From positions 3,807,668 through 3,871,667 of the forward strand of contig MU057887.1 of NCBI GenBank assembly GCA_013265495.1: a stretch of 64,000 bases of DNA, written 5' to 3'. The notes beneath the pieces were generated by a model. The model made no database searches. It was not told the origin of the DNA and saw nothing but the letters and a program-made list of their open reading frames with translations. This DNA comes from Vicugna vicugna. Lineage: Eukaryota. Below, in pieces: positions 13,280 through 53,419 of the stretch (position 1 is its first letter; each line of letters opens with the position of its first letter). Position numbers and translations under genes: made by a program.

Positions 13280-14400
13280 CCTGGAGGGGCGCTGAGGAGA
13301 CGCCCCGCAGTGTCCGCCTGCCCGCTGCCCCAGGGAGGGGTGCCAGTCCGCGACACCGGGCGGGCGGGGGCCTCGGCGCCCACAGTGGCGGCCAGGCTTT
13401 GGTAGGGAGCAGAGAGCGACTGCGGGAAGCGGGCGAGGAAACCCCTCTCCCGGGGCGGCTCTGGGACCACGCGCCTGGAAGAGGGGGGCCCGGGACGCCG
13501 CAGGTCCCAGGCGGTCTCCACCGCGCGCGGCCGCCCCCGCGCCCAGGGCGAGGGTAGCCCCCGGCTCAGCCACCCCCGCCTCCCCACCCTGAGGACGTGG
13601 AGGGACCAGTCATTGTTCATTCATTTTATTTAATTTAAATATTTTTTGCAAAGTCATCGTCGGCGCCGCATCTGCGTGCGGGGAGAGGGGGGGCGGAGCC
13701 ACGGCGCGAGTTGCCGCAGGTAAACAGCCCCCTCCCCGCGGCGGGACAGCAGCCGCCGCCCGCCGCTCGGGGCGGGGGTCCCGCCGCCGCCCCCGCCGGA
13801 AGGACACGCCACGCNNNNNNNNNNNNNNNNNNNNNNNNNNNNNNNNNNNNNNNNNNNNNNNNNNNNNNNGGCGGCCCGACCCCTGCCCGCGGGGCGGCGG
13901 CGGAGCGCCCCCCCACCGCCGCCGCGGGCCCCGCGCCCCCCGCGCCCCCCATGCACCACCTCCTGGAGCAGTCCGCGGACATGGCGACGGCGCTGCTGGC
14001 CGGCGAGAAGCTGCGCGAGCTGATCCTGCCGGGCGCGCAGGACGACAAGGCGGGCGCGCTGGCCGCGCTGCTGTTGCAGCTCAAGCTGGAGCTGCCGTTC
14101 GACCGCGTGGTCACCATCGGCACCGTGCTCGTCCCCATCCTGCTGGTCACCCTGGTCTTCACCAAGAACTTCGCAGGTGAGGCCGGGGGCACGGCGGGAG
14201 GGGCGCGTGCTCTCTCCAACACCCTCGCAGCTGCAGCCGGCCGCGGGCCACCCCGCTGGAGCCTGCGAGTGAGGGCGGTGCCCGGGTCTCCCCGCAGACC
14301 CTCCGCACTCCACCTGCCCCCACCCCGTCCCTGCATGGGTCGCCGCGGCTGCCTCCCAGACGCCTCTCCTCCGATTTACTGATTTCACCTTCCATTCGCT
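13280..14400. promoter_or_regulatory. PANX2 promoter / exon 1 CpG island
   Basis: Dense CpG and GC boxes around ATG 13951; contains a 55-N gap (13815-13869). Confidence 0.85.
13815..13869. other. Assembly gap (55 N)
   Basis: Run of N in the PANX2 promoter/5' UTR. Confidence 1.
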
Positions 14401-20400: not shown

Positions 20401-22313
20401 ATCGAGAAGCAGATCCAGTCCAAGGGGCCCGGCATCACGGAGCGCGAGCGGCGCGAGATCATCGAGAACGCAGAGAAGGAGAAGAGCCCTGAGCAGAACC
20501 TGTTCGAGAAGTACCTGGAGCGCCGCGGCCGCAGCAACTTTCTAGCCAAGCTCTACCTAGCGCGGCACCTGCTCATCCTGCTGCTCAGCGTGGCGCCCAT
20601 CTCTTACCTGTGCACCTACTACGCCACCCAGAAGCAGAACGAGTTCACCTGCGCGCTGGGCGCAGCCCCGGGAGGCGGGGGCCCGGCGGTGCGCGTCAGC
20701 TGCAAGCTGCCGTCCGTGCAGCTGCAGCGCATCGTGGCGGGCGTGGACATCGTGCNNNNNNNNNNNNNNNNNNNNNNNNNNNNNNNNNNNNNNNNNNNNN
20801 NNNNNNNNNNNNNNNNNNNNNNNNNNNNNNNNNNNNNNNNNNNNNNNNNNNNNNNNNNNNNNNNNNNNNNNNNNNNNNNNNNNNNNNNNNNNNNNNNNNN
20901 NNNNNNNNNNNNNNNNNNNNNNNNNNNNNNNNNNNNNNNNNNNNNNNNNNNNNNNNNNNNNNNNNNNNNNNNNNNNNNNNNNNNNNNNNNNGACAACGTG
21001 GTGCGGCAGCTGCTGGCCGCTCTCGCCCAGTCCAACCACGACGCCACGCCCACCGTGCGCGACGCGGGCGTGCAGACCGTGGACCCCAGTGCCAACCCCG
21101 CCGAGCCCGACGGCGCCGCCGAGCCGCCGGTGGTCAAGCGGCCCCGCAAGAAGATGAAGTGGATCCCCTCCGGCAACCCGCTGCCCCAGCCCTTCAAGGA
21201 GCCGCTGGCCATCATGCGCGTGGAGAACAGCAAGGCGGAGAAGCCCAAGCCCGTACGCCGCAAGACGGCCACGGACACGCTGATCGCGCCGCTGCTGGAC
21301 GCGGGCGCGCGCGCCGCGCACCACTACAAGGGCGGCGGGGGCGACGCGGGGCCCGCCCCAGACAAGAAGCACGCCCGCCACTTCTCCCTGGACGTGCACC
21401 CTTACGTCCTGGGCACCAAGAAGGCGAAGCCCGAGGCCGTGCCCGCCGCGCTGCCCGCCTCCCGGAGCCAGGACGGCGGCTTCCTGTCCCAGGCGGAGGA
21501 GTGCGCGCTGGGCCTGACCGCAGCACCCACCGCAGGTAAGGGCGGGCCGAGGGCGGGGCGGAGCCGGGCGGGCGGGGCTGGAGCGGAGGGCGGCCCCTGG
21601 AGGCCGCAGGGAAGGGAGGACGACCCCAGCAATGCTCCCCAGACGGCTTGCACCTGGGAGCTGTTTGAAAGAGGTTAAGGACTGAGCCAGCTGGATGGAA
21701 GCAGGGACGGGCAGGCGGGACCCTGGAGGGCCCTGTGAAACAGACGGGATGAAGGCTGGGCCGCGGGCTGGCGGGGACACAGTAAGGTGGTAACGTTGAG
21801 AAGGTTCTGGAAATGGGCGCTGCTGCTCCTGGGCGAGTCCACCCAGCCAGGCCGCTGTGTGCCAGAGCTGCAGAACCCCGAGTCCCAGCCGCCCAGGTGA
21901 GGGGAGGGGACCGGAAGGCGGGGTAGAGAGGGAGGCCTGCACAGGCTCTGTGCTCTGGGCTGTTTGCAGACGCGCCCTTGCCGGAGAAGGAAATCCTGTT
22001 CCCAGCAGAGCCAGCCCTGGCCGCACTTCCCTCGGGGGGCCCTTTTCACGTCTGCTCGCCCCCTGCAGCCCCCGCCACGGCCCCGCTGTCCCCAGCCAGC
22101 CTGAGTAAGGCTGATCCTCTGGCCATTCTGAGCCGCAACGCCACCCACCCGCTGCTGCACATCAGCACCCTATACGAGGCCCGGGAGGAGGAGGACGGGG
22201 CCCCACGAGCACCTCCGGACGTGGGCGGCCTCATCACCATCCCTCCCCCACAGCAGATCCTCATCGCCACATTCGACGAGCCAAGGACAGTAGTGAGTAC
22301 CGTGGAGTTCTGA
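13951..22313 (+). CDS. PANX2: Pannexin-2 (3 coding exons, about 667 aa)
   Basis: Exon 1 13951-14176 (MHHLLEQSADMATALL...TKNFA|gtgagg); exon 2 20102-21535 (EEPIYCYTPHNFTRDQ..., with 236 N); exon 3 21970-22313 (...EPRTVVSTVEF TGA). 226+1434+344=2004 nt, in frame. Confidence 0.98.
16226..16675 (+). mobile_element. Tigger1-derived non-autonomous DNA transposon (TcMar-Tigger)
   Basis: TIRs CAGGCAGACCTC / GAGGCCTGCCTG, preceded by TA. Internal CAATATTTCAAACTTTTTCATTATT and GACTCGCTTTATTG match recalled Tigger1 ends. Confidence 0.85.
16950..17370 (-). mobile_element. MLT1-family MaLR LTR remnant
   Basis: AACAAATGACCACAAACTTAGTGGCT...GGAATTTATC and GGCCCACCCAGATAATC match recalled MLT1 consensus. 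Ends approximate. Confidence 0.75.
20756..20991. other. Assembly gap (236 N) inside PANX2 exon 2
   Basis: Run of N between ...VDIV and DNVV...; frame is preserved across it. Confidence 1.
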
Positions 22314-25995: not shown

Positions 25996-26700
25996 TACCG
26001 CCTGAGTCCTCGGATCGAGGCGCTGGATACTAGGCGGGGCGGGGCTTCTCACGCGCGGCCTCCTGGGAAGTGGAGTCCGCGGCCGCTCGCGCGCATCCCC
26101 CTGGGAACTGTAGTCCTTGGGCGCGTACTGGGCGCACTTCAAGAGAAGGCAGACGGCGCGCTGAACTACGCTTCCCGGCATGCCGCGCGCCGCCCGGCCT
26201 CCCAGCCCCGGCCCGTCCGGCCGCCCCGCCCCGCAGCCCCGGTCCGCCCCGTCCGGTGGGGCGACGAGCCGCATGGAGGCCGGCTGAGGAACGCCGCCCA
26301 GCCTCGGTACGCCGCGCGGCACGGGCTTGGGGCGGGGGGGCGGCGCGCGGGGTCTCCAGCGGGTCAGGGTCAGATCGAGGTCGGGGGCCACCGCTCTCCG
26401 GGCCGGGCCCAACCAGCCCCCAGCGTGGGGTCGCGGGCCGGAAGGGGAAGCCCCGGCCTCCGAGGAGCGCGCGCTGGGTCGGGGTCGACGGCGAGGGTCG
26501 CAAGGGCTGGAGCTCTCGGTGGTGCAGCCCGGGGGCGGGGCCTTGGAGGCAGGGACTAGAGGCCGAAGTCGGGGGCCGGGGGCCAGGAGTTGGGGTCGGG
26601 GGTGAGGCGCGGGGTCCCCACCTCCCCAGGCGGCGGCCGCAGGAGACCCTGGGCTCTTCCGCGTGCTGGAGGCCTCCGCCCTTCAGGCCGAGCGAGTGAG
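25960..26700. promoter_or_regulatory. TRABD promoter CpG island with ZNF143/THAP11-type motifs and non-coding exon 1
   Basis: High CpG density. SBS-like motifs at 26063-26078, 26101-26116 (rc GGACTACAGTTCCCAG) and 26165-26183 (ACTACGCTTCCCGGCATGC). Candidate exon 1 donor gtacgc at 26307. Confidence 0.8.
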
Positions 26701-34500: not shown

Positions 34501-34831
34501 TGGACCACTGACCTCAACATCCAGGAGATCATGACGTGAGTGCCACCCACCCACTCCTCGCGCCCCCACACGCAGAGCTGGCAGCCGTGCCCGGACTGGG
34601 GGCTGGGGATCACTCATCCCCGAACCAGGCCCAGCCCACCCTCCCTCCCCCAGCGTGCCCCCGCCGTCCGTCTCCGGCAGAGCGTCCCGCCTGGCCCTGA
34701 AGGCTGCCTTCTTGGGCCTCCTGGGCTACGGCCTGTACTGGATGGGGCGCCGCGCCACCAGCCTGGTCCTGTCTCTGCCCGCCGCCCAGTACTGCCTGCA
34801 GAAGGCGTCCGAGGTCTGGCCGCGCAAGTAG
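31587..34831 (+). CDS. TRABD: TraB domain-containing protein (9 coding exons, 377 aa)
   Basis: Exons 31587-31619, 31977-32055, 32433-32599 (VYVVGTAHFS), 32830-32970 (VVVELCQYR), 33656-33766, 33858-33997, 34176-34348 (IVSERD), 34424-34535 (VVGMGHVPGI), 34654-34831 (C-terminal TM, TAG). Sum 1134 nt, all GT-AG. Confidence 0.98.
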
Positions 34832-35963: not shown

Positions 35964-36942
35964 GCCTACTTTTGGAAGCCTGTTTGGTGACGTGTGTAGA
36001 TGGGACTCAGTGGCAAGGGCAGGGCTCCCCAGGCCGTGGGGCCCAGGCTGGGCGCACCCGCGTCCCAGTGTGCACCCGTGCCCTCACCCTCGGTCCCCGC
36101 CCTGCTCAGCCCCCAACCCTGGCATGTGGGAGGGGAGGAGGTGGGCGAGTCCAGCAATCTAAACGAAACTGTGGGGACCAGTGGCTAAGATTTTCCCAGA
36201 AGGACGACAGCGAGCCTGGAGTGGGGCGTGGGCCGTTCCAGGGGCGCAGCAGGAGGCTGGCGGGGCTGGGGGCCCCTTCACCGTCTCTGCCCCAGGAGGC
36301 CCAGCTCTCCCTTCGTGCTGGGTCTTCCGCACTCTCCTGCCTCCTCTGCCCTGGGCCAGCACTGATGGTTCACAATGGGCAGAGGGCTCCTGAGCCTCCC
36401 GAGACTGAGGTCCTCTCCACAGGTCCAGGCAGCGCTGCTGGAACCCTGAGGTCTGGCTACATGCATGGGAGAGGGAGGGCCGGCAGGCACCCACAAGTCT
36501 GCACCCTGCAGGCCTCTCCTGGCGAGGACCCGCCTGGGTCCCTGCCCCCAGTGGTCTAGGGAGGAGGGCAGAGGACAAGTCCCTTCCAGTCGCATGTTAG
36601 GAGAGGCCAGCTGGGCTGGGGAAGAAGGCGGGACAGCCCAGGTAGACCCTCCAAGGGCAGCAGGTGAGATCCACGTTGGACCCATGGGGGAGAGGGGGTA
36701 CCTGGGGGCAGCAGGAGGAGCCAAGGAATCAAAGGCCTGGCAGAGGGCTGGGGGCTGGCACATGCTTGGAGCCCAAGGGACAGCCACTTCCAGAACAGAA
36801 GAAGCCTGAAGTGGGTATGGCCTGAGGTGAGGCGACAGTGGCTGGCCGACAGTTTATCATCTGCTGGACTGTCCACTGGCCCTTCTTGGGCTCTGGTCCC
36901 GGTCACCTGGAGAGCACTGACCTCCTGGGACGTCTCTTACAG

Positions 36943-38531
36943 GGAGGGGCTGCTCTCAGATCTGGGTAGAGAACCAGAGGGGCCCCAGGGGTGTGTCCAC
37001 CGTCCGGCCAAGGGAGCCAGCACCGCTTCCAGGTGAGCAGCCTGCAGCGTGGGGGCTGCAGAGACAGCTGGCATGCCGCTGTGGCAGAAACAAGACACTA
37101 CTGTTCGAGGCTGGCAGGGCAAGGGCCGGGCCGGGCACTTGCCTCCCAGAGGCCATCCTCAGCCCACTCACACCTGGTAGGGACATGTTCTCTGAGGTTG
37201 TCTACAGTCAGGAAGAGCGAGGGGAAACTCAAACGTCCACCTCTAAGGGAACAAACAAAGACGCCCAGGACACAAGTTAGGTACAAAATTATATGCATTG
37301 AATTGTGGGCCACTGGCCTGAGGCCTGGGGAGTTACTTTGATATGCACCCTATTTCTGAGAATTGGAATTTATTACAATGCAAGTTCGTATTATAGTGAC
37401 AAGCAGAAAAACAAAAAGGTTTCATTTTTTCAAATACACAAAGTGCTTAGGGGAGAGTGGACACCTCTCTCCTTCTAGACAGGAGTGGAGGCCTGCATGA
37501 TGTGCCCAGGCACTGCCAGCACAGATGAAGGTGATGTGCCGCCCCTGCCCCCAAGTTTCCTGTGACGTGTATGACAGTGGTTGGACAGTGATTCAGTCGC
37601 GGACAGGGAGAGGCTGCTGGATTTTGAGAGGTGCTGGCAGGAGTACAAATAGCTTCAGAGACTTGGGAGGGAGGAGGGCTGTACTGCCTGAGGGGAACAG
37701 AGAATGAGCGGCCAGGTATCCCAGGCCTTGTCCTAGGGGCCAGAGCTTGAGCCCCACCAAGAACACAGGGCAGGGGTGGCAGGAGGCGGCAAGGGACTGC
37801 CAGCAGGTGCAGACCTGAGCCTGGGTGCCTCTCTCCTGCAGGTGACCACTGGTTAGGGCTGGCGCACATCTCGGGCCTGACCACCCAGCCTGGCCTGCAC
37901 ACCAAGCTGATGGTGGACCTGCGGGACACGGACAACACTGTGGGCCCATTATGACAAATTCTGCGTGGACACGGGAGACCAGTTGTACCGGCTCAGTCTC
38001 AGCCTTTGCTTGGCACCGCAGGTGAGTGCCTGGGGGCTCTCGGGCAACCTCCCCGTCCCGCCCCCAGGCACCCTGCTTTGCTGACGTGTTTTCCAGGCAA
38101 GGGGCTAGAGGGAAGGAGGGGACCCAGAGACTCCAACTTCCCAGCCCACACCTGCCAGCCTTCATTCTCTGGGCAAGGATATTGCACCTCCCTTGGAGGT
38201 CCCTCATGGCTGGGAAACATCATGGGGGCGCAGCGCCAGAGGAGTCTCCGCCCATGCTGCCCCACGCGCAGGGGACGCGGTCCCGGATTTGGGCCGCAGC
38301 GACAAGCAGGAGGGCCGCGGCTTCAGCACGCTGGACCGCGACCTCAACAGCGGCGCCCCTGCGTGGACGGCGCGCACACCTTCGCCAGCTGTAGCCGCGA
38401 TCGCTCGGGCGCTGGCGGGTGGTACAGCGACCTCGGCCAGGCCAACCTCAACGCGCAGGGGCCGACTCAAGCGTGCGCTTTGCCCCAGCCGACCACCCAC
38501 CGGCCCTGCGCTCTGCGCCGGCCTCATTAAA
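36943..38531 (+). pseudogene. Unprocessed pseudogene of a fibrinogen-related domain (FReD; FGL1/angiopoietin-like/ficolin superfamily) protein
   Basis: Exon A 36943-37032 (RGCSQIWVENQRGPRGVSTVRPREPAPLP); exon B 37556-37669 (VSCDVYDSGWTVIQSR/LLDFERCWQEYK/SFRDLG); exon C 37842-38021 (GDHWLGLAHISGLTTQ...LMVDLRDTDNT/WAHYDKFCVDTGDQLYRLSL/GTA); exon D from 38272 (GDAV...GFSTLDRD/PCVDG..SC..GAGGWYSDLGQANLN). All introns phase 1. Five frameshifts, TGA at 37952-37954, exon B donor lost, ATTAAA at 38526. Confidence 0.92.
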
Positions 38532-39089
38532 TGTTAAGCCCGGCTGCCTGGGGGTCGTCTTTGCGGGGAGGGGCCAGGAAACGGCGGAGCTCAGCTGCAG
38601 AGGCACCTGCCCAAGTGGGATGGGCCAAGGGAAGTCTGGGAGGCCGGGTAGCTCAGCAGCTAGGCCACAGGCAAGGCTGCCAGGGCTGGGAGGGTCATCC
38701 CCGCAGTGCTGACCTGCTGGAACCCTTGAAGCCCACCAGGCGTCCCCTCTGGCTGTGAGCTCATTGAGGGCCCTCAAAAACCTAGTCCCACCAGATTCAA
38801 AGTGTGGGTAGGACAGCAGAGTCAGGGGGCAAGGTCAGGAGGGCCTGGGCCTGAGGAAGAGGGAGGGGTGACACCAGGCTCAGGCCTGGTCTCCTAGGCA
38901 GTGAGGAAGGAGGCTGGGAACAGGGTACTCCGCCAGCAGGCCAGGTGGGGAAGACACCGGGTGGGCCCAGGTGGAAGGGAATCCATCAGGCTGCAGGGGG
39001 CATTCCGGAGTGCTGAGTACCTACCAGGACCTCACCACGTTGTCCCCGTTGTCTGTGTCACCCTAACCCCACACAGAAGGTAGTCATCA

Positions 39090-39514: not shown

Positions 39515-40822
39515 GGTAGAGTCATTGTTTATCTCAGCAACGAGGACCCCAAGCTGGAGGCGGCTGAGGGGTTCCCCGAGGTCACACGGCGACAGGGGCA
39601 GAGATGGTTCTCATGAGGTCTGGGAAGCCTCGTTGTGGCCCCAGGAGAAAGTTCAGAGGCGGCCCCTTGAAGGTAGGTGTGGAATCGGGGCTCCTGGAAG
39701 AAAGAGCAGCCCCAGCCAGGAGGGAGCTGGAGAGTTTGTCAAGGGTCTCGGGTTTCAGTCTGAGCCCACATGGGCAGGGGATTGGGAGCCCCTCCAAGAA
39801 CCACTCTTTCCATGCAGGCATCAGCGGGGTCACCTAGTGGGGAGGAGTCTCCACAAGGCTCCTCTGAACTGAATTCGAATCATTTTGCAACACTGACTTG
39901 CCCCACCTCCTCACCTGGGGGGGGCCCTTCAAGGCCAAGCTTGACCATCCCCACCCTGCGCCCACCTCAGCCTCCTGCACATCTCCAAGGAGTTTCTCTG
40001 GGCCAGGAGCTGCTCTGGGGGAACTGGTGCCCAGATCATCAGAGCTCCTGCTCTCGCAAAGTGAGGGTGAGAAAAGACATACAAGAAACAGGAAAATAAG
40101 GGAATGAGCTCATTTCAGAGAGAAGTGCAAGGAAAAACACAGGGTGACAGGAGGCACGGCGGGCAAGGCAGGCAGCAGGGCGGTACGGGATCTAGCATGC
40201 CTGTGCGGAATCGCGCTCCAGGCGGGGATAGCGCAGGCGCAAAGGCCCCGCACTAGGGAGGCGCCCGGCCGGGGGCTGGCAGGCTCCAGGCTTTGGCCTC
40301 CTCCTCGGGCTCTGCCTGGCCCACAGCTGTTCCCATGAATTCTCCCAGATCCAGACAAATGTTGTCCTCTTTCCCTCCTGTCCTGTGCGCGGCTAGCAAA
40401 AACACAATCCAGGTCCAGACCCTCAGCACAGCGTAGCGGTGGGGCTGCCCTTGGCTTCCCCCCCGGAGTTGGGGGCACCCTGGAGGTCCACTGGGGACGT
40501 CATTCGGCACAGTCACCGGCTTGGAGCGCTCAGCCTGGTCTGGCAGGTGCCTCCCAGGGCGGACTTCCAGGGACCTGACGGCTGCGGCGCAGGGCAGTCA
40601 TTCCGGACTGCCCTGTCTCAACTGCCCACTCCAGCCCTCAGCCGCAGCTCCGCGGAACCGGCCCTCGCAGTCCCCCGAGGCGGGACCTGGCGCAGAAGCG
40701 GACAGACGGTGCGACCAATCAGAGCTAGGCTTCCGGGGCGCGGCCCTCGACAACTGGGCGGCGGGGAGCAGGGCGGGGCTTCCTGTCGGGGCAAAGAGGC
40801 TTCCGCCGCAGCGGCGCCTCGG

Positions 40823-53419
<12,597 letters not shown>

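What the first reader, a model, noticed from the sequence alone, without database searches (positions are those of the whole stretch)
36943..38531. Hidden four-exon fibrinogen-related-domain gene, decayed in situ, between TRABD and SELENOO
Seen: four spaced + strand segments reassemble into a near-complete fibrinogen C-terminal domain. A: cag|GG-RGCSQIW...GVSTVRP..PLP|gtgagc. B: aag|VSCDVYDSGWTVIQSR..LLDFERCWQEYK..SFRDLG. C: cag|GDHWLGLAHISGLT...LMVDLRD..WAHYDKF...YRLSL..GTA|gtgagt. D: cag|GDAV...GFSTLDRD...SC...GGWYSDLGQANLN, then ATTAAA. All junctions are phase 1 and splice into consensus residues (G|TT=V of VxCD, G|GT=G of GxxWLG, G|GG=G of AGD). Established: these are the hallmark FReD motifs of the FGL1/ANGPTL/ficolin families. 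Lesions: five frameshifts, TGA 37952-37954, exon B donor GT changed to GG, and Leu at the Cys normally found after the GGWW motif. Inference: because it keeps introns it is not a retrocopy. It is most likely a unitary pseudogene of a secreted lectin/angiopoietin-like protein that I do not recall from the standard mammalian gene order here. No single ORF in the track reveals it.
Basis: partly seen in the sequence, partly recalled or inferred. Interest (0 to 1): 0.92.

Follow-up and report, generated by a model that had tools for sequence, protein, structure and literature searches.

The report
Dead salivary fibrinogen-like gene relic
Between TRABD and SELENOO this camelid-like genome carries the wreck of a six-exon secreted fibrinogen-domain gene that is intact in carnivores, pangolins, tree shrews, a lemur and afrotherians, where it is auto-named 'angiopoietin-related protein 5-like'; a dog protein of that name, most likely the same gene, is abundant in saliva, and the gene was already broken before camelids and whales diverged.

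Summary
Four + strand blocks at 36943-38531 encode a fibrinogen-related domain (FReD). Intact orthologues hit them by tblastn at E 1e-4 to 2e-18. An HMM built from non-placental FReDs puts its six best hits among 2309 six-frame pieces exactly here, in profile order.

The interpretation (unitary pseudogene that keeps its introns) is supported and extended. In the Arctic fox a 273-aa Fibrinogen_C gene is called between TRABD and SELENOO, and the manatee has all six exons open. NCBI auto-names the orthologues 'angiopoietin-related protein 5-like'. A dog protein of that name (LOC607055) is abundant in saliva.

Its copy has:
- lost the ATG;
- gained an in-frame TGA in exon 2;
- about 13 frameshifting indels;
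- two broken splice sites;
- no stop codon.

Four frameshifting deletions sit at identical alignment columns in the narwhal relic, so the gene died before camelids and whales split. A flying fox and a hare keep only traces.

This is a new member of a known kind, of moderate interest.

The parts
34660..34831 (+). Last coding exon of TRABD (stop 34829-34831); upstream neighbour
   Evidence: Translation ..LYWMGRRATSLVLSLPAAQYCLQKASEVWPRK*. The TRABD exon peptides are 98.6-99% identical to Vicugna pacos TRABD.
36301..36383 (+). Relic of exon 1 (start codon and signal peptide). ATG replaced by CCA at 36301-03. Indels: +1 near 36340, -4 near 36347 (shared with narwhal), +1 near 36365.
   Evidence: blastn to fox exon 1, E 1e-4. 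MAFFT with fox, manatee and narwhal, all of which keep the ATG.
36423..36450 (+). Relic of the 28-nt exon 2 (linker ..ALLEPQ|G). In-frame TGA at 36447-36449 where fox and manatee have CAA and narwhal has CAG. The splice sites look intact.
   Evidence: 84% identity to fox exon 2 and flanks, E 9e-10; alignment and reading.
36943..37032 (+). Relic of exon A (start of the FReD: GRGCSQIW..). Two 1-nt deletions near 37012 and 37027, both shared with narwhal.
   Evidence: Aligns to manatee 26535-26636 at 79%.
37555..37669 (+). Relic of exon B (VSCDVY.DSGWTVIQ..LDFERCWQEYK..FRDLG). Acceptor AG->AA at 37553-54. Indels: -3 near 37573, -7 near 37598, -2 near 37652. Donor GT->GG at 37670-71.
37842..38021 (+). 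Relic of exon C (GDHWLGL..LMVDLRD..WAHYDKF..YRLSL). -5 near 37936 and -1 near 38012 (the latter shared with narwhal). Both splice sites kept.
   Evidence: (76% identity to the seal orthologue, E 4e-8).
38272..38526 (+). Relic of exon D (GDAV..GFSTLDRD..SCS..GGWYSDLGQANLN..). Indels: -1 near 38357, -16 near 38457, -10 near 38515. Stop codon lost. Trp->Gly (GGG 38417-19), Cys->Leu (CTC 38432-34), first Cys of the family CxPC motif ->Gly.
38527..38532 (+). ATTAAA polyadenylation-signal relic, also present downstream of the stop codon in fox and manatee
41180..41400 (+). SELENOO exon 1; downstream neighbour
   Evidence: Pfam SelO E 7.7e-16 on the ORF 40439-41536, residues 248-320.

Best explanation
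This is the non-functional, in-situ remnant (unitary-type pseudogene) of a six-exon gene for a small secreted fibrinogen-related-domain protein. In intact species that protein is about 272 aa: signal peptide, roughly 18-aa linker, then the FReD. In placentals the gene sits between TRABD and SELENOO.

The window's copy cannot make the protein. The start codon is gone, exon 2 carries an in-frame TGA, about 13 frameshifting indels are spread over five exons, one acceptor and one donor are mutated, invariant Cys and Trp residues are replaced, and the stop codon region is deleted.

Four frameshifting deletions are shared with the narwhal relic. The gene was therefore already dead in the common ancestor of camelids and cetaceans and has drifted since (inferred).

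In lineages that keep the gene, the product is most likely the dog saliva and enamel-pellicle protein reported under the same auto-name (the link rests on the shared name and on canid family members). It is presumably a calcium-dependent carbohydrate or acetyl-group binding lectin of the oral surface. That role is inferred from the fold family, not shown.
For: Homology:
- (statistics on the window itself);
- (manatee orthologous exons: Pfam Fibrinogen_C E 2e-25 and 8.5e-9);
- (window piece C1 is 76% identical to seal orthologues, E 4e-8 against 1.8 billion proteins).

Orthology and synteny:
- (fox: a 273-aa PF00147 gene between TRABD and SELENOO);
- (manatee);
- (narwhal);
- (TRABD and the FReD gene lie on a contig of the same length, i.e. 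chromosome level only, in Echinops, tiger and Manis pentadactyla);
- (placental clade support 100, window plus narwhal 97, inside Laurasiatheria 96).

Lesions.

Not an assembly artefact: six runs labelled with the window's organism hold 81-91% of the sampled words, and four lesions recur in narwhal.

Relaxed constraint: dN/dS is 0.80 for window-narwhal against 0.53 for fox-manatee (a rough pairwise estimate).

Expression of intact orthologues:
- dog proteomics papers;
- a 273-aa product on a 944-nt Logan contig in a cluster whose named members are felids, which can only be spliced mRNA.

No RNA run holds more than 9% of the exon D words in the window's species.
Against: I could not search the rest of this genome for an intact paralogue.

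Low-level transcription of the relic is therefore not excluded.

The link between dog LOC607055 and this locus rests on the shared NCBI name and on canid family members (dingo protein, fox synteny). The dog record itself was not inspected.

The 'shared lesion' calls depend on MAFFT gap placement. Only one deep partner lineage (cetaceans) was available.
Confidence: 0.93

Rival explanations
1. It is a duplicated, non-unitary pseudogene. An intact paralogue of the same family still works elsewhere in this genome, and this copy is the redundant one.
For: Nothing positive. The rest of the genome was simply not searchable with these tools.
Against: The relic lies at the position where the single intact gene lies in fox and manatee. 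The gene tree follows the species tree with one copy per species. No second FReD signal occurs in the 64-kb window.
Confidence: 0.05
2. The coding function is dead, but the relic has been taken over as a non-coding transcript or as a regulatory element upstream of SELENOO. That would explain why the exon blocks still align across orders while the introns do not.
For: Against manatee and fox, the exon blocks and only a few other short stretches align. A few RNA or metatranscriptome runs hold 5-9% of the words.
Against: Exon-only conservation is expected when the partner lineage is still under coding constraint. Against narwhal, which is also dead, introns and exons align alike at about 70%. dN/dS between window and narwhal is near neutral at 0.80. 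The RNA shares are tiny and come mostly from metatranscriptomic libraries.
Confidence: 0.07
3. The gene is still functional, and the lesions are sequencing or assembly errors or are bypassed by alternative splicing.
For: Exon A's net -2 together with an AG shifted by one base at exon B would by accident restore the frame across that junction.
Against: There are about 13 frameshifts, a lost ATG, an in-frame TGA, two broken splice sites and a lost stop. Four lesions are shared with another order-level lineage. The sequence is reproduced in several DNA runs.
Confidence: 0.01

Closest known systems
Placental 'angiopoietin-related protein 5-like' genes (dog LOC607055 / UniProt F1P931; cat XP_003989466.1; dingo XP_048971015.1; also Suricata, Ailuropoda, Halichoerus, Manis, Tupaia, Microcebus, Echinops, Loxodonta, Dugong)
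   Same: Same locus (TRABD-SELENOO), same six-exon structure, 57-64% residual amino-acid identity over the FReD (for the 64%), and the same family signatures: DHWLGL, FRG, CxPC..SCS, CG.ADLNG.W.
   Different: The window's copy is dead. It has no ATG, a premature TGA, many frameshifts, broken splice sites and lost invariant Cys and Trp residues. The intact genes encode a roughly 272-aa secreted protein, and a dog protein of this name is found in saliva.
Non-mammalian members of the same FReD lineage (Latimeria, Callorhinchus, caecilian, frogs, some teleosts; auto-named 'fibrinogen-like protein 1' or 'angiopoietin-related protein 5-like')
   Same: They form one clade with the placental genes (support 99), at 35-40% identity over the B+C query region. 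The FReD exon junctions are the same in the frog Ascaphus, and the four family cysteines are invariant.
   Different: A long stem branch (1.12) separates the placental clade. The placental C-terminal part is shorter and has lost the W..W.TW motif. Shared synteny with TRABD/SELENOO could not be shown: no relic was found in the turtle or echidna interval, and the frog locus shows no neighbours within 10 kb.
ANGPTL family proper (ANGPTL2 FReD 6y41; ANGPTL5)
   Same: FReD fold. ANGPTL2 is the best PDB sequence match at 132 bits.
   Different: There is no N-terminal coiled coil: only about 18 residues lie between the signal peptide and the FReD. The score to ANGPTL2 is barely above those to techylectin-5A, angiopoietin-1, FIBCD1 and FGL1 (117-122 bits), so there is no specific affinity. 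The NCBI name is an automatic label, not orthology to ANGPTL5.
FIBCD1 (4m7f)
   Same: The window's piece C1 finds FIBCD1 as its best PDB match through the shared G(D/E)HWLGL..LT.Q motif. Both are FReD proteins of mucosal surfaces (the role of FIBCD1 is from my general knowledge).
   Different: FIBCD1 is a type II membrane protein with a coiled coil (my knowledge). Here the N-terminus is a signal-peptide-like leader and the protein is FReD-only. From my recollection of the FIBCD1 numbering, the His after the conserved Cys is Gly in this family (CG.ADLNG); this was not tested structurally.

Membership tests
Fibrinogen_C domain (Pfam PF00147) | Significant match to the domain profile | tested here: met
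   Orthologous manatee exons score E 2e-25 (profile 31-134) and 8.5e-9 (131-186). Window piece C1 alone scores E 0.021, below the curated cut-off because it is only 37 aa. The window versus PF00147-bearing orthologues gives tblastn E down to 2e-18. Six colinear hits come from an independent FReD HMM.
Fibrinogen_C domain (Pfam PF00147) | Conserved cysteines and the GGWW..C..NLNG core | tested here: not met
   In the window the first Trp of WW is Gly, the following Cys is Leu, and the first Cys of CxPC is Gly. This fits decay rather than non-membership by descent.
TRABD-SELENOO FReD orthogroup ('angiopoietin-related protein 5-like') | Same genomic position and orientation | tested here: met
   Fox, manatee and narwhal loci and blastn exon-by-exon.
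TRABD-SELENOO FReD orthogroup ('angiopoietin-related protein 5-like') | Same exon-intron structure (six exons) | tested here: met
   All six fox exons have a counterpart in the same order in the window.
TRABD-SELENOO FReD orthogroup ('angiopoietin-related protein 5-like') | Groups with the orthologues in a gene tree | tested here: met
   Placental clade 100; window plus narwhal 97; Laurasiatheria 96 (quick IQ-TREE, SH-aLRT support only).
Unitary pseudogene | Disabling lesions in a gene that is intact in other species at the same locus | tested here: met
Unitary pseudogene | No functional paralogue of the same gene in the same genome | not testable with these tools
   Only this 64-kb window of the genome is available. 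Earlier scan notes hold nothing under 'fibrinogen'.
Processed pseudogene (retrocopy) | Intronless copy with a poly(A) tail at a non-syntenic site | tested here: not met
   Five introns are retained with recognisable splice sites, and the position is syntenic.
ANGPTL family (as the NCBI name suggests) | N-terminal coiled-coil region before the FReD | tested here: not met
   Intact orthologues run signal peptide, about 18 aa, then FReD. PDB scores show no special closeness to the ANGPTLs.

The most novel reading that the evidence does not exclude
The TRABD-SELENOO FReD gene is an unnamed, gnathostome-old lineage of secreted fibrinogen-domain lectins, distinct from the ANGPTLs, FGL1, FIBCD1 and the ficolins. 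It serves as a major salivary or oral-surface protein in some mammals. It has been lost independently several times in placentals: on the stem of Cetartiodactyla, in a fruit bat, in a hare, and probably in anthropoid primates and rodents. That would make it a natural experiment linking an oral innate-immune lectin to diet or oral ecology.
Probability: 0.5. Interest if true: 0.55.

Novelty: new member of a known kind. Interest (0 to 1): 0.42.

Why it matters
On its own this is an ordinary dead gene. Its value is as a pointer.

It marks a vertebrate-wide FReD gene that has no curated name, no studied function ('not reported' in the dog saliva catalogue) and, as far as I recall, no annotated counterpart in human or mouse. 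A dog protein with the same auto-name is among the more abundant proteins of saliva and enamel pellicle and was identified in IgE-reactive saliva spots.

The gene is intact in carnivores, pangolins, tree shrew, mouse lemur and afrotherians. It is decayed in camelid and cetaceans and nearly erased in a flying fox and a hare. That pattern gives a ready-made loss map for asking what the protein does.

For annotation, the relic should be labelled a pseudogene. The auto-name 'ANGPTL5-like' is misleading.

Tried and rejected
- Pfam on the eight short pieces gave only one sub-threshold hit. PDB phmmer of piece D1 found nothing. The pieces are too short, and I did not type a stitched peptide into the tools. 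Significance came instead from orthologues fetched by synteny.
- tblastn with the window's own pieces against the turtle and echidna loci gave only noise.
- The look-up of encoding contigs had no record for the Monodelphis, Chelonia and Camelus TRABD isoforms. No marsupial and no second camelid locus was therefore obtained.
- The frog orthologue's locus shows no neighbours within 10 kb, so synteny outside placentals is undecided.
- The last look-up (P0204) returned only cetacean contigs about 96-97% identical to narwhal. They give no new deep lineage.
- Three literature searches found no paper on the evolution or loss of this gene.
- The AlphaFold2 model of the seal orthologue is confident for residues 38-172 only. 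The ligand-binding P region has pLDDT below 50. I ran no fold search and make no structural claim about the binding site.
- Chance similarity, a retrocopy and assembly error were each considered and rejected (see the rival explanations).

Full report
**1. What is there**

Four blocks carry, in three shifting frames, these motifs: GRGCSQIW..GVSTVRP; VSCDVYDSGWTVIQSR / LLDFERCWQEYK / FRDLG; GDHWLGLAHISGLTTQ..LMVDLRD / WAHYDKF..YRLSL; and GDAV..GFSTLDRD / SCS..GGWYSDLGQANLN. ATTAAA follows at 38527-32.

The neighbours are as stated. TRABD's coding exons lie at about 32.4-34.83 kb on the + strand, with the stop at 34829-31. SELENOO exon 1 lies at about 41.2-41.4 kb on the + strand (Pfam SelO, E 7.7e-16). 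The TRABD exon peptides are 98.6-99% identical to alpaca TRABD and 97.5% to dromedary. The window is therefore from a camelid, which is an inference.

**2. Is it more than chance?**

Yes.
- Four FReD signature regexes hit only at this locus in the whole window on both strands, and in the right order.
- Single pieces are too short for Pfam. Only the 37-aa piece C1 reaches Fibrinogen_C, at E 0.021. Its best PDB match is FIBCD1, at E 0.005.
- Against 1.8 billion representative proteins, C1 finds 220-312-aa FReD proteins at 70-78% identity, with E from 4e-8 to 1e-5.
- tblastn of ten intact orthologues against the window gives linked E-values of 2e-18 (exon D), 9e-14 (C), 3e-7 (B) and 1e-4 (A).
- I built an HMM from 46 FReD proteins of fish, amphibians and invertebrates only. 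Among 2309 six-frame pieces of the window, its six best hits all lie at 37501-38534 on the + strand. They fall in profile order: 72-93, 93-105, 112-142, 143-165, 172-192 and 195-220.

**3. Finding the living gene by synteny**

I used a TRABD exon to fetch TRABD proteins of many vertebrates, then looked up their loci.
- In the Arctic fox a 273-aa gene with PF00147 is called at L005:13903-15796, between TRABD and SELENOO.
- In the Amazonian manatee nothing is called there. Even so, blastn of the window's intergenic region finds the four exon blocks and only a few other short stretches.
- All manatee exons are open. Pfam gives Fibrinogen_C at E 2e-25 and 8.5e-9 on them.
- The fox gene has six exons: exon 1 (ATG and signal peptide), a 28-nt exon 2, and exons A-D encoding the FReD. 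The stop is TAG, with ATTAAA downstream.
- Intron phases in the fox are 0, 1, 0, 1, 1.

**4. What the gene is called and where it exists**

A search with the manatee B+C frame returned orthologues of about 271-273 aa. They come from dugong, elephant, tenrec, mouse lemur, tree shrew, meerkat, hyaena, many cats, panda, otter, seals, dingo, raccoon dog, mink and pangolins. Nearly all are auto-named 'angiopoietin-related protein 5-like'. A few are named 'FIBCD1-like', 'angiopoietin-2-like' or 'uncharacterized'.

TRABD and the FReD gene sit on contigs of the same length (the same chromosome-scale record) in tenrec, tiger and Chinese pangolin.

A 273-aa product on a 944-nt Logan contig, in a cluster whose named members are felids, can only be spliced mRNA.

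The architecture is signal peptide, about 18 residues, then the FReD. There is no coiled coil, so this is not an ANGPTL in architecture. Against solved structures the seal protein scores 132 bits to ANGPTL2, 122 to techylectin-5A and angiopoietin-1, 118 to FIBCD1 and 117 to FGL1. In other words, it has no specific affinity to any of them.

Relatives at 35-40% identity exist in coelacanth, elephant shark, a caecilian, frogs and some teleosts.
- They form one clade with the placental genes, with support 99.
- They share four invariant cysteines (CxPC..SCS..C) and the CG.A.LNG.W motif.
- In the frog Ascaphus they share the FReD exon junctions.

**5. Literature**

A protein of this name, dog 'angiopoietin-related protein 5-like', appears in several reports:
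- as gi|73968855 (31.7 kDa), identified in four IgE-reactive 2-D gel spots of dog saliva (PMC3652036);
- as LOC607055, listed among the high-count proteins of the dog salivary proteome with function 'not reported' (PMC5766244);
- as LOC607055 / F1P931, in a table of the dog acquired enamel pellicle proteome, in a column reading 5 (PMC9388946);
- in another saliva data set (PMC7222850).

The link to this locus rests on the shared name, the dingo family member and the fox synteny. I did not see the dog record itself. I found no paper on the gene's evolution or loss.

**6. State of the window's copy**

All six exons have counterparts in the window. Alignment to fox, manatee and narwhal shows the following.
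- Exon 1 (36301-36383): ATG replaced by CCA; indels +1, -4, +1.
- Exon 2 (36423-36450): CAA changed to TGA at 36447-49, in frame.
- Exon A (36943-37032): two 1-nt deletions, near 37012 and 37027.
- Exon B (37555-37669): acceptor AG changed to AA (37553-54); indels -3, -7, -2; donor GT changed to GG (37670-71).
- Exon C (37842-38021): -5 near 37936 and -1 near 38012.
- Exon D (38272 onward): -1, -16 and about -10; the stop region is lost.
- Residue changes in exon D: Trp to Gly (38417-19), Cys to Leu (38432-34), and the first Cys of CxPC to Gly.

That makes about 13 frameshifting indels, nine of them in exons A-D.

The net -2 in exon A, plus an AG one base downstream of the dead acceptor, happen to restore the frame.

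The sequence is not an assembly error. Six runs labelled with the window's organism hold 81-91% of its sampled words.

**7. When did it die?**

The narwhal interval holds a relic with its own lesions: a TGA in exon B, the exon A donor changed from GT to GA, the exon C acceptor changed from AG to GG, and several indels.

Four frameshifting deletions fall in the same alignment columns in the window and in narwhal: -4 in exon 1, the two -1 in exon A, and -1 in exon C. In the tree the two relics are sisters, with support 97. Pairwise dN/dS over exons A-D is 0.80 for window-narwhal against 0.53 for fox-manatee (a rough NG86 estimate).

I infer that inactivation preceded the camelid-cetacean split, that is, it happened on the stem of Cetartiodactyla. 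More lineages are needed, because the extra contigs I fetched were all cetacean.

Elsewhere:
- The flying-fox interval keeps only traces of exons 2 and A, and it contains a 407-N gap.
- The hare interval (2.3 kb) keeps only a trace around exon 2.
- The loggerhead turtle interval (9.8 kb) and the echidna interval show nothing.

**8. How it works**

In this genome it does not work. No start codon, signal peptide, continuous frame or stop codon survives. No RNA run in the index holds more than 9% of the words of exon D. Read-level evidence could not be obtained.

The ancestral product is a secreted FReD protein. By analogy with ficolins, FIBCD1 and techylectins it most likely binds carbohydrate or acetyl groups on microbes or oral surfaces in a calcium-dependent way. 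The analogy is an inference from established knowledge of the fold; the family does keep the DRD.D motif.

The ligand-binding C-terminal part is divergent and poorly modelled: pLDDT is below 50 for residues 174-253, against above 85 for most of residues 40-160. I therefore make no claim about specificity.

**9. Verdict**

The kind of thing, a unitary pseudogene, is well known. The parent gene is already predicted in many genomes and a protein of that name has been seen in dog saliva. The camelid and cetacean pseudogene and the wider loss pattern appear undescribed.

Interest is moderate. The relic itself is ordinary, but it draws attention to an unstudied, misnamed, ancient FReD lineage with a patchy mammalian distribution.

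Noticed in passing
L003:25811-27741 (Trichechus inunguis, GCA_046562895.1): All six exons of the FReD gene are open, with ATG, a signal-peptide-like leader, good splice sites and a stop. Yet no gene is called there in the collection's gene table. The dugong and elephant predictions are N-terminally truncated or read through the intron upstream of exon A.
   Followed up: partly
L004:14580-16900 (Monodon monoceros) and L009-L016 (Logan contigs about 96-97% identical to narwhal): The cetacean copies are pseudogenes with their own lesions. A 96-aa 'protein' in the database (P0204) is just a translated stretch of the cetacean relic.
   Followed up: partly
L007:15840-16470 (Pteropus vampyrus) and L008:14344-14472 (Lepus europaeus): Only traces of exon 2 and exon A (bat) or of exon 2 (hare) remain between TRABD and SELENOO. 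These look like independent, near-complete erasures, but the bat interval has a 407-N gap.
   Followed up: partly
L002:32947-37976 (Tachyglossus aculeatus): A called gene with a 961-aa product and no Pfam hit on record starts 5 kb downstream of TRABD, where SELENOO is expected. It may be a mis-merged model. No FReD signal occurs in it.
   Followed up: no
L005:4771-8158 (-) (Vulpes lagopus): A called 610-aa product without any Pfam family lies on the minus strand between PANX2 and TRABD. It may be a spurious call in GC-rich DNA.
   Followed up: no
window 13815-13869 and 20756-20991: Two runs of N (55 and 236 bases).
   Followed up: no
window 44001-46000: GC content drops sharply to 0.39 with strong AT skew, inside an otherwise 60-68% GC region downstream of SELENOO exon 1. 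It is probably an interspersed repeat in the first intron.
   Followed up: no
window 37012-37032 / 37553-37556: The two 1-nt deletions in exon A and an AG shifted by one base at the dead exon B acceptor together sum to -3.
   Followed up: yes
P0136 model, residues 174-253: AlphaFold2 with a 27-sequence alignment models the A/B part of the FReD confidently but not the cysteine-rich insert and the P region. This is the part that differs most from canonical FReDs.
   Followed up: no
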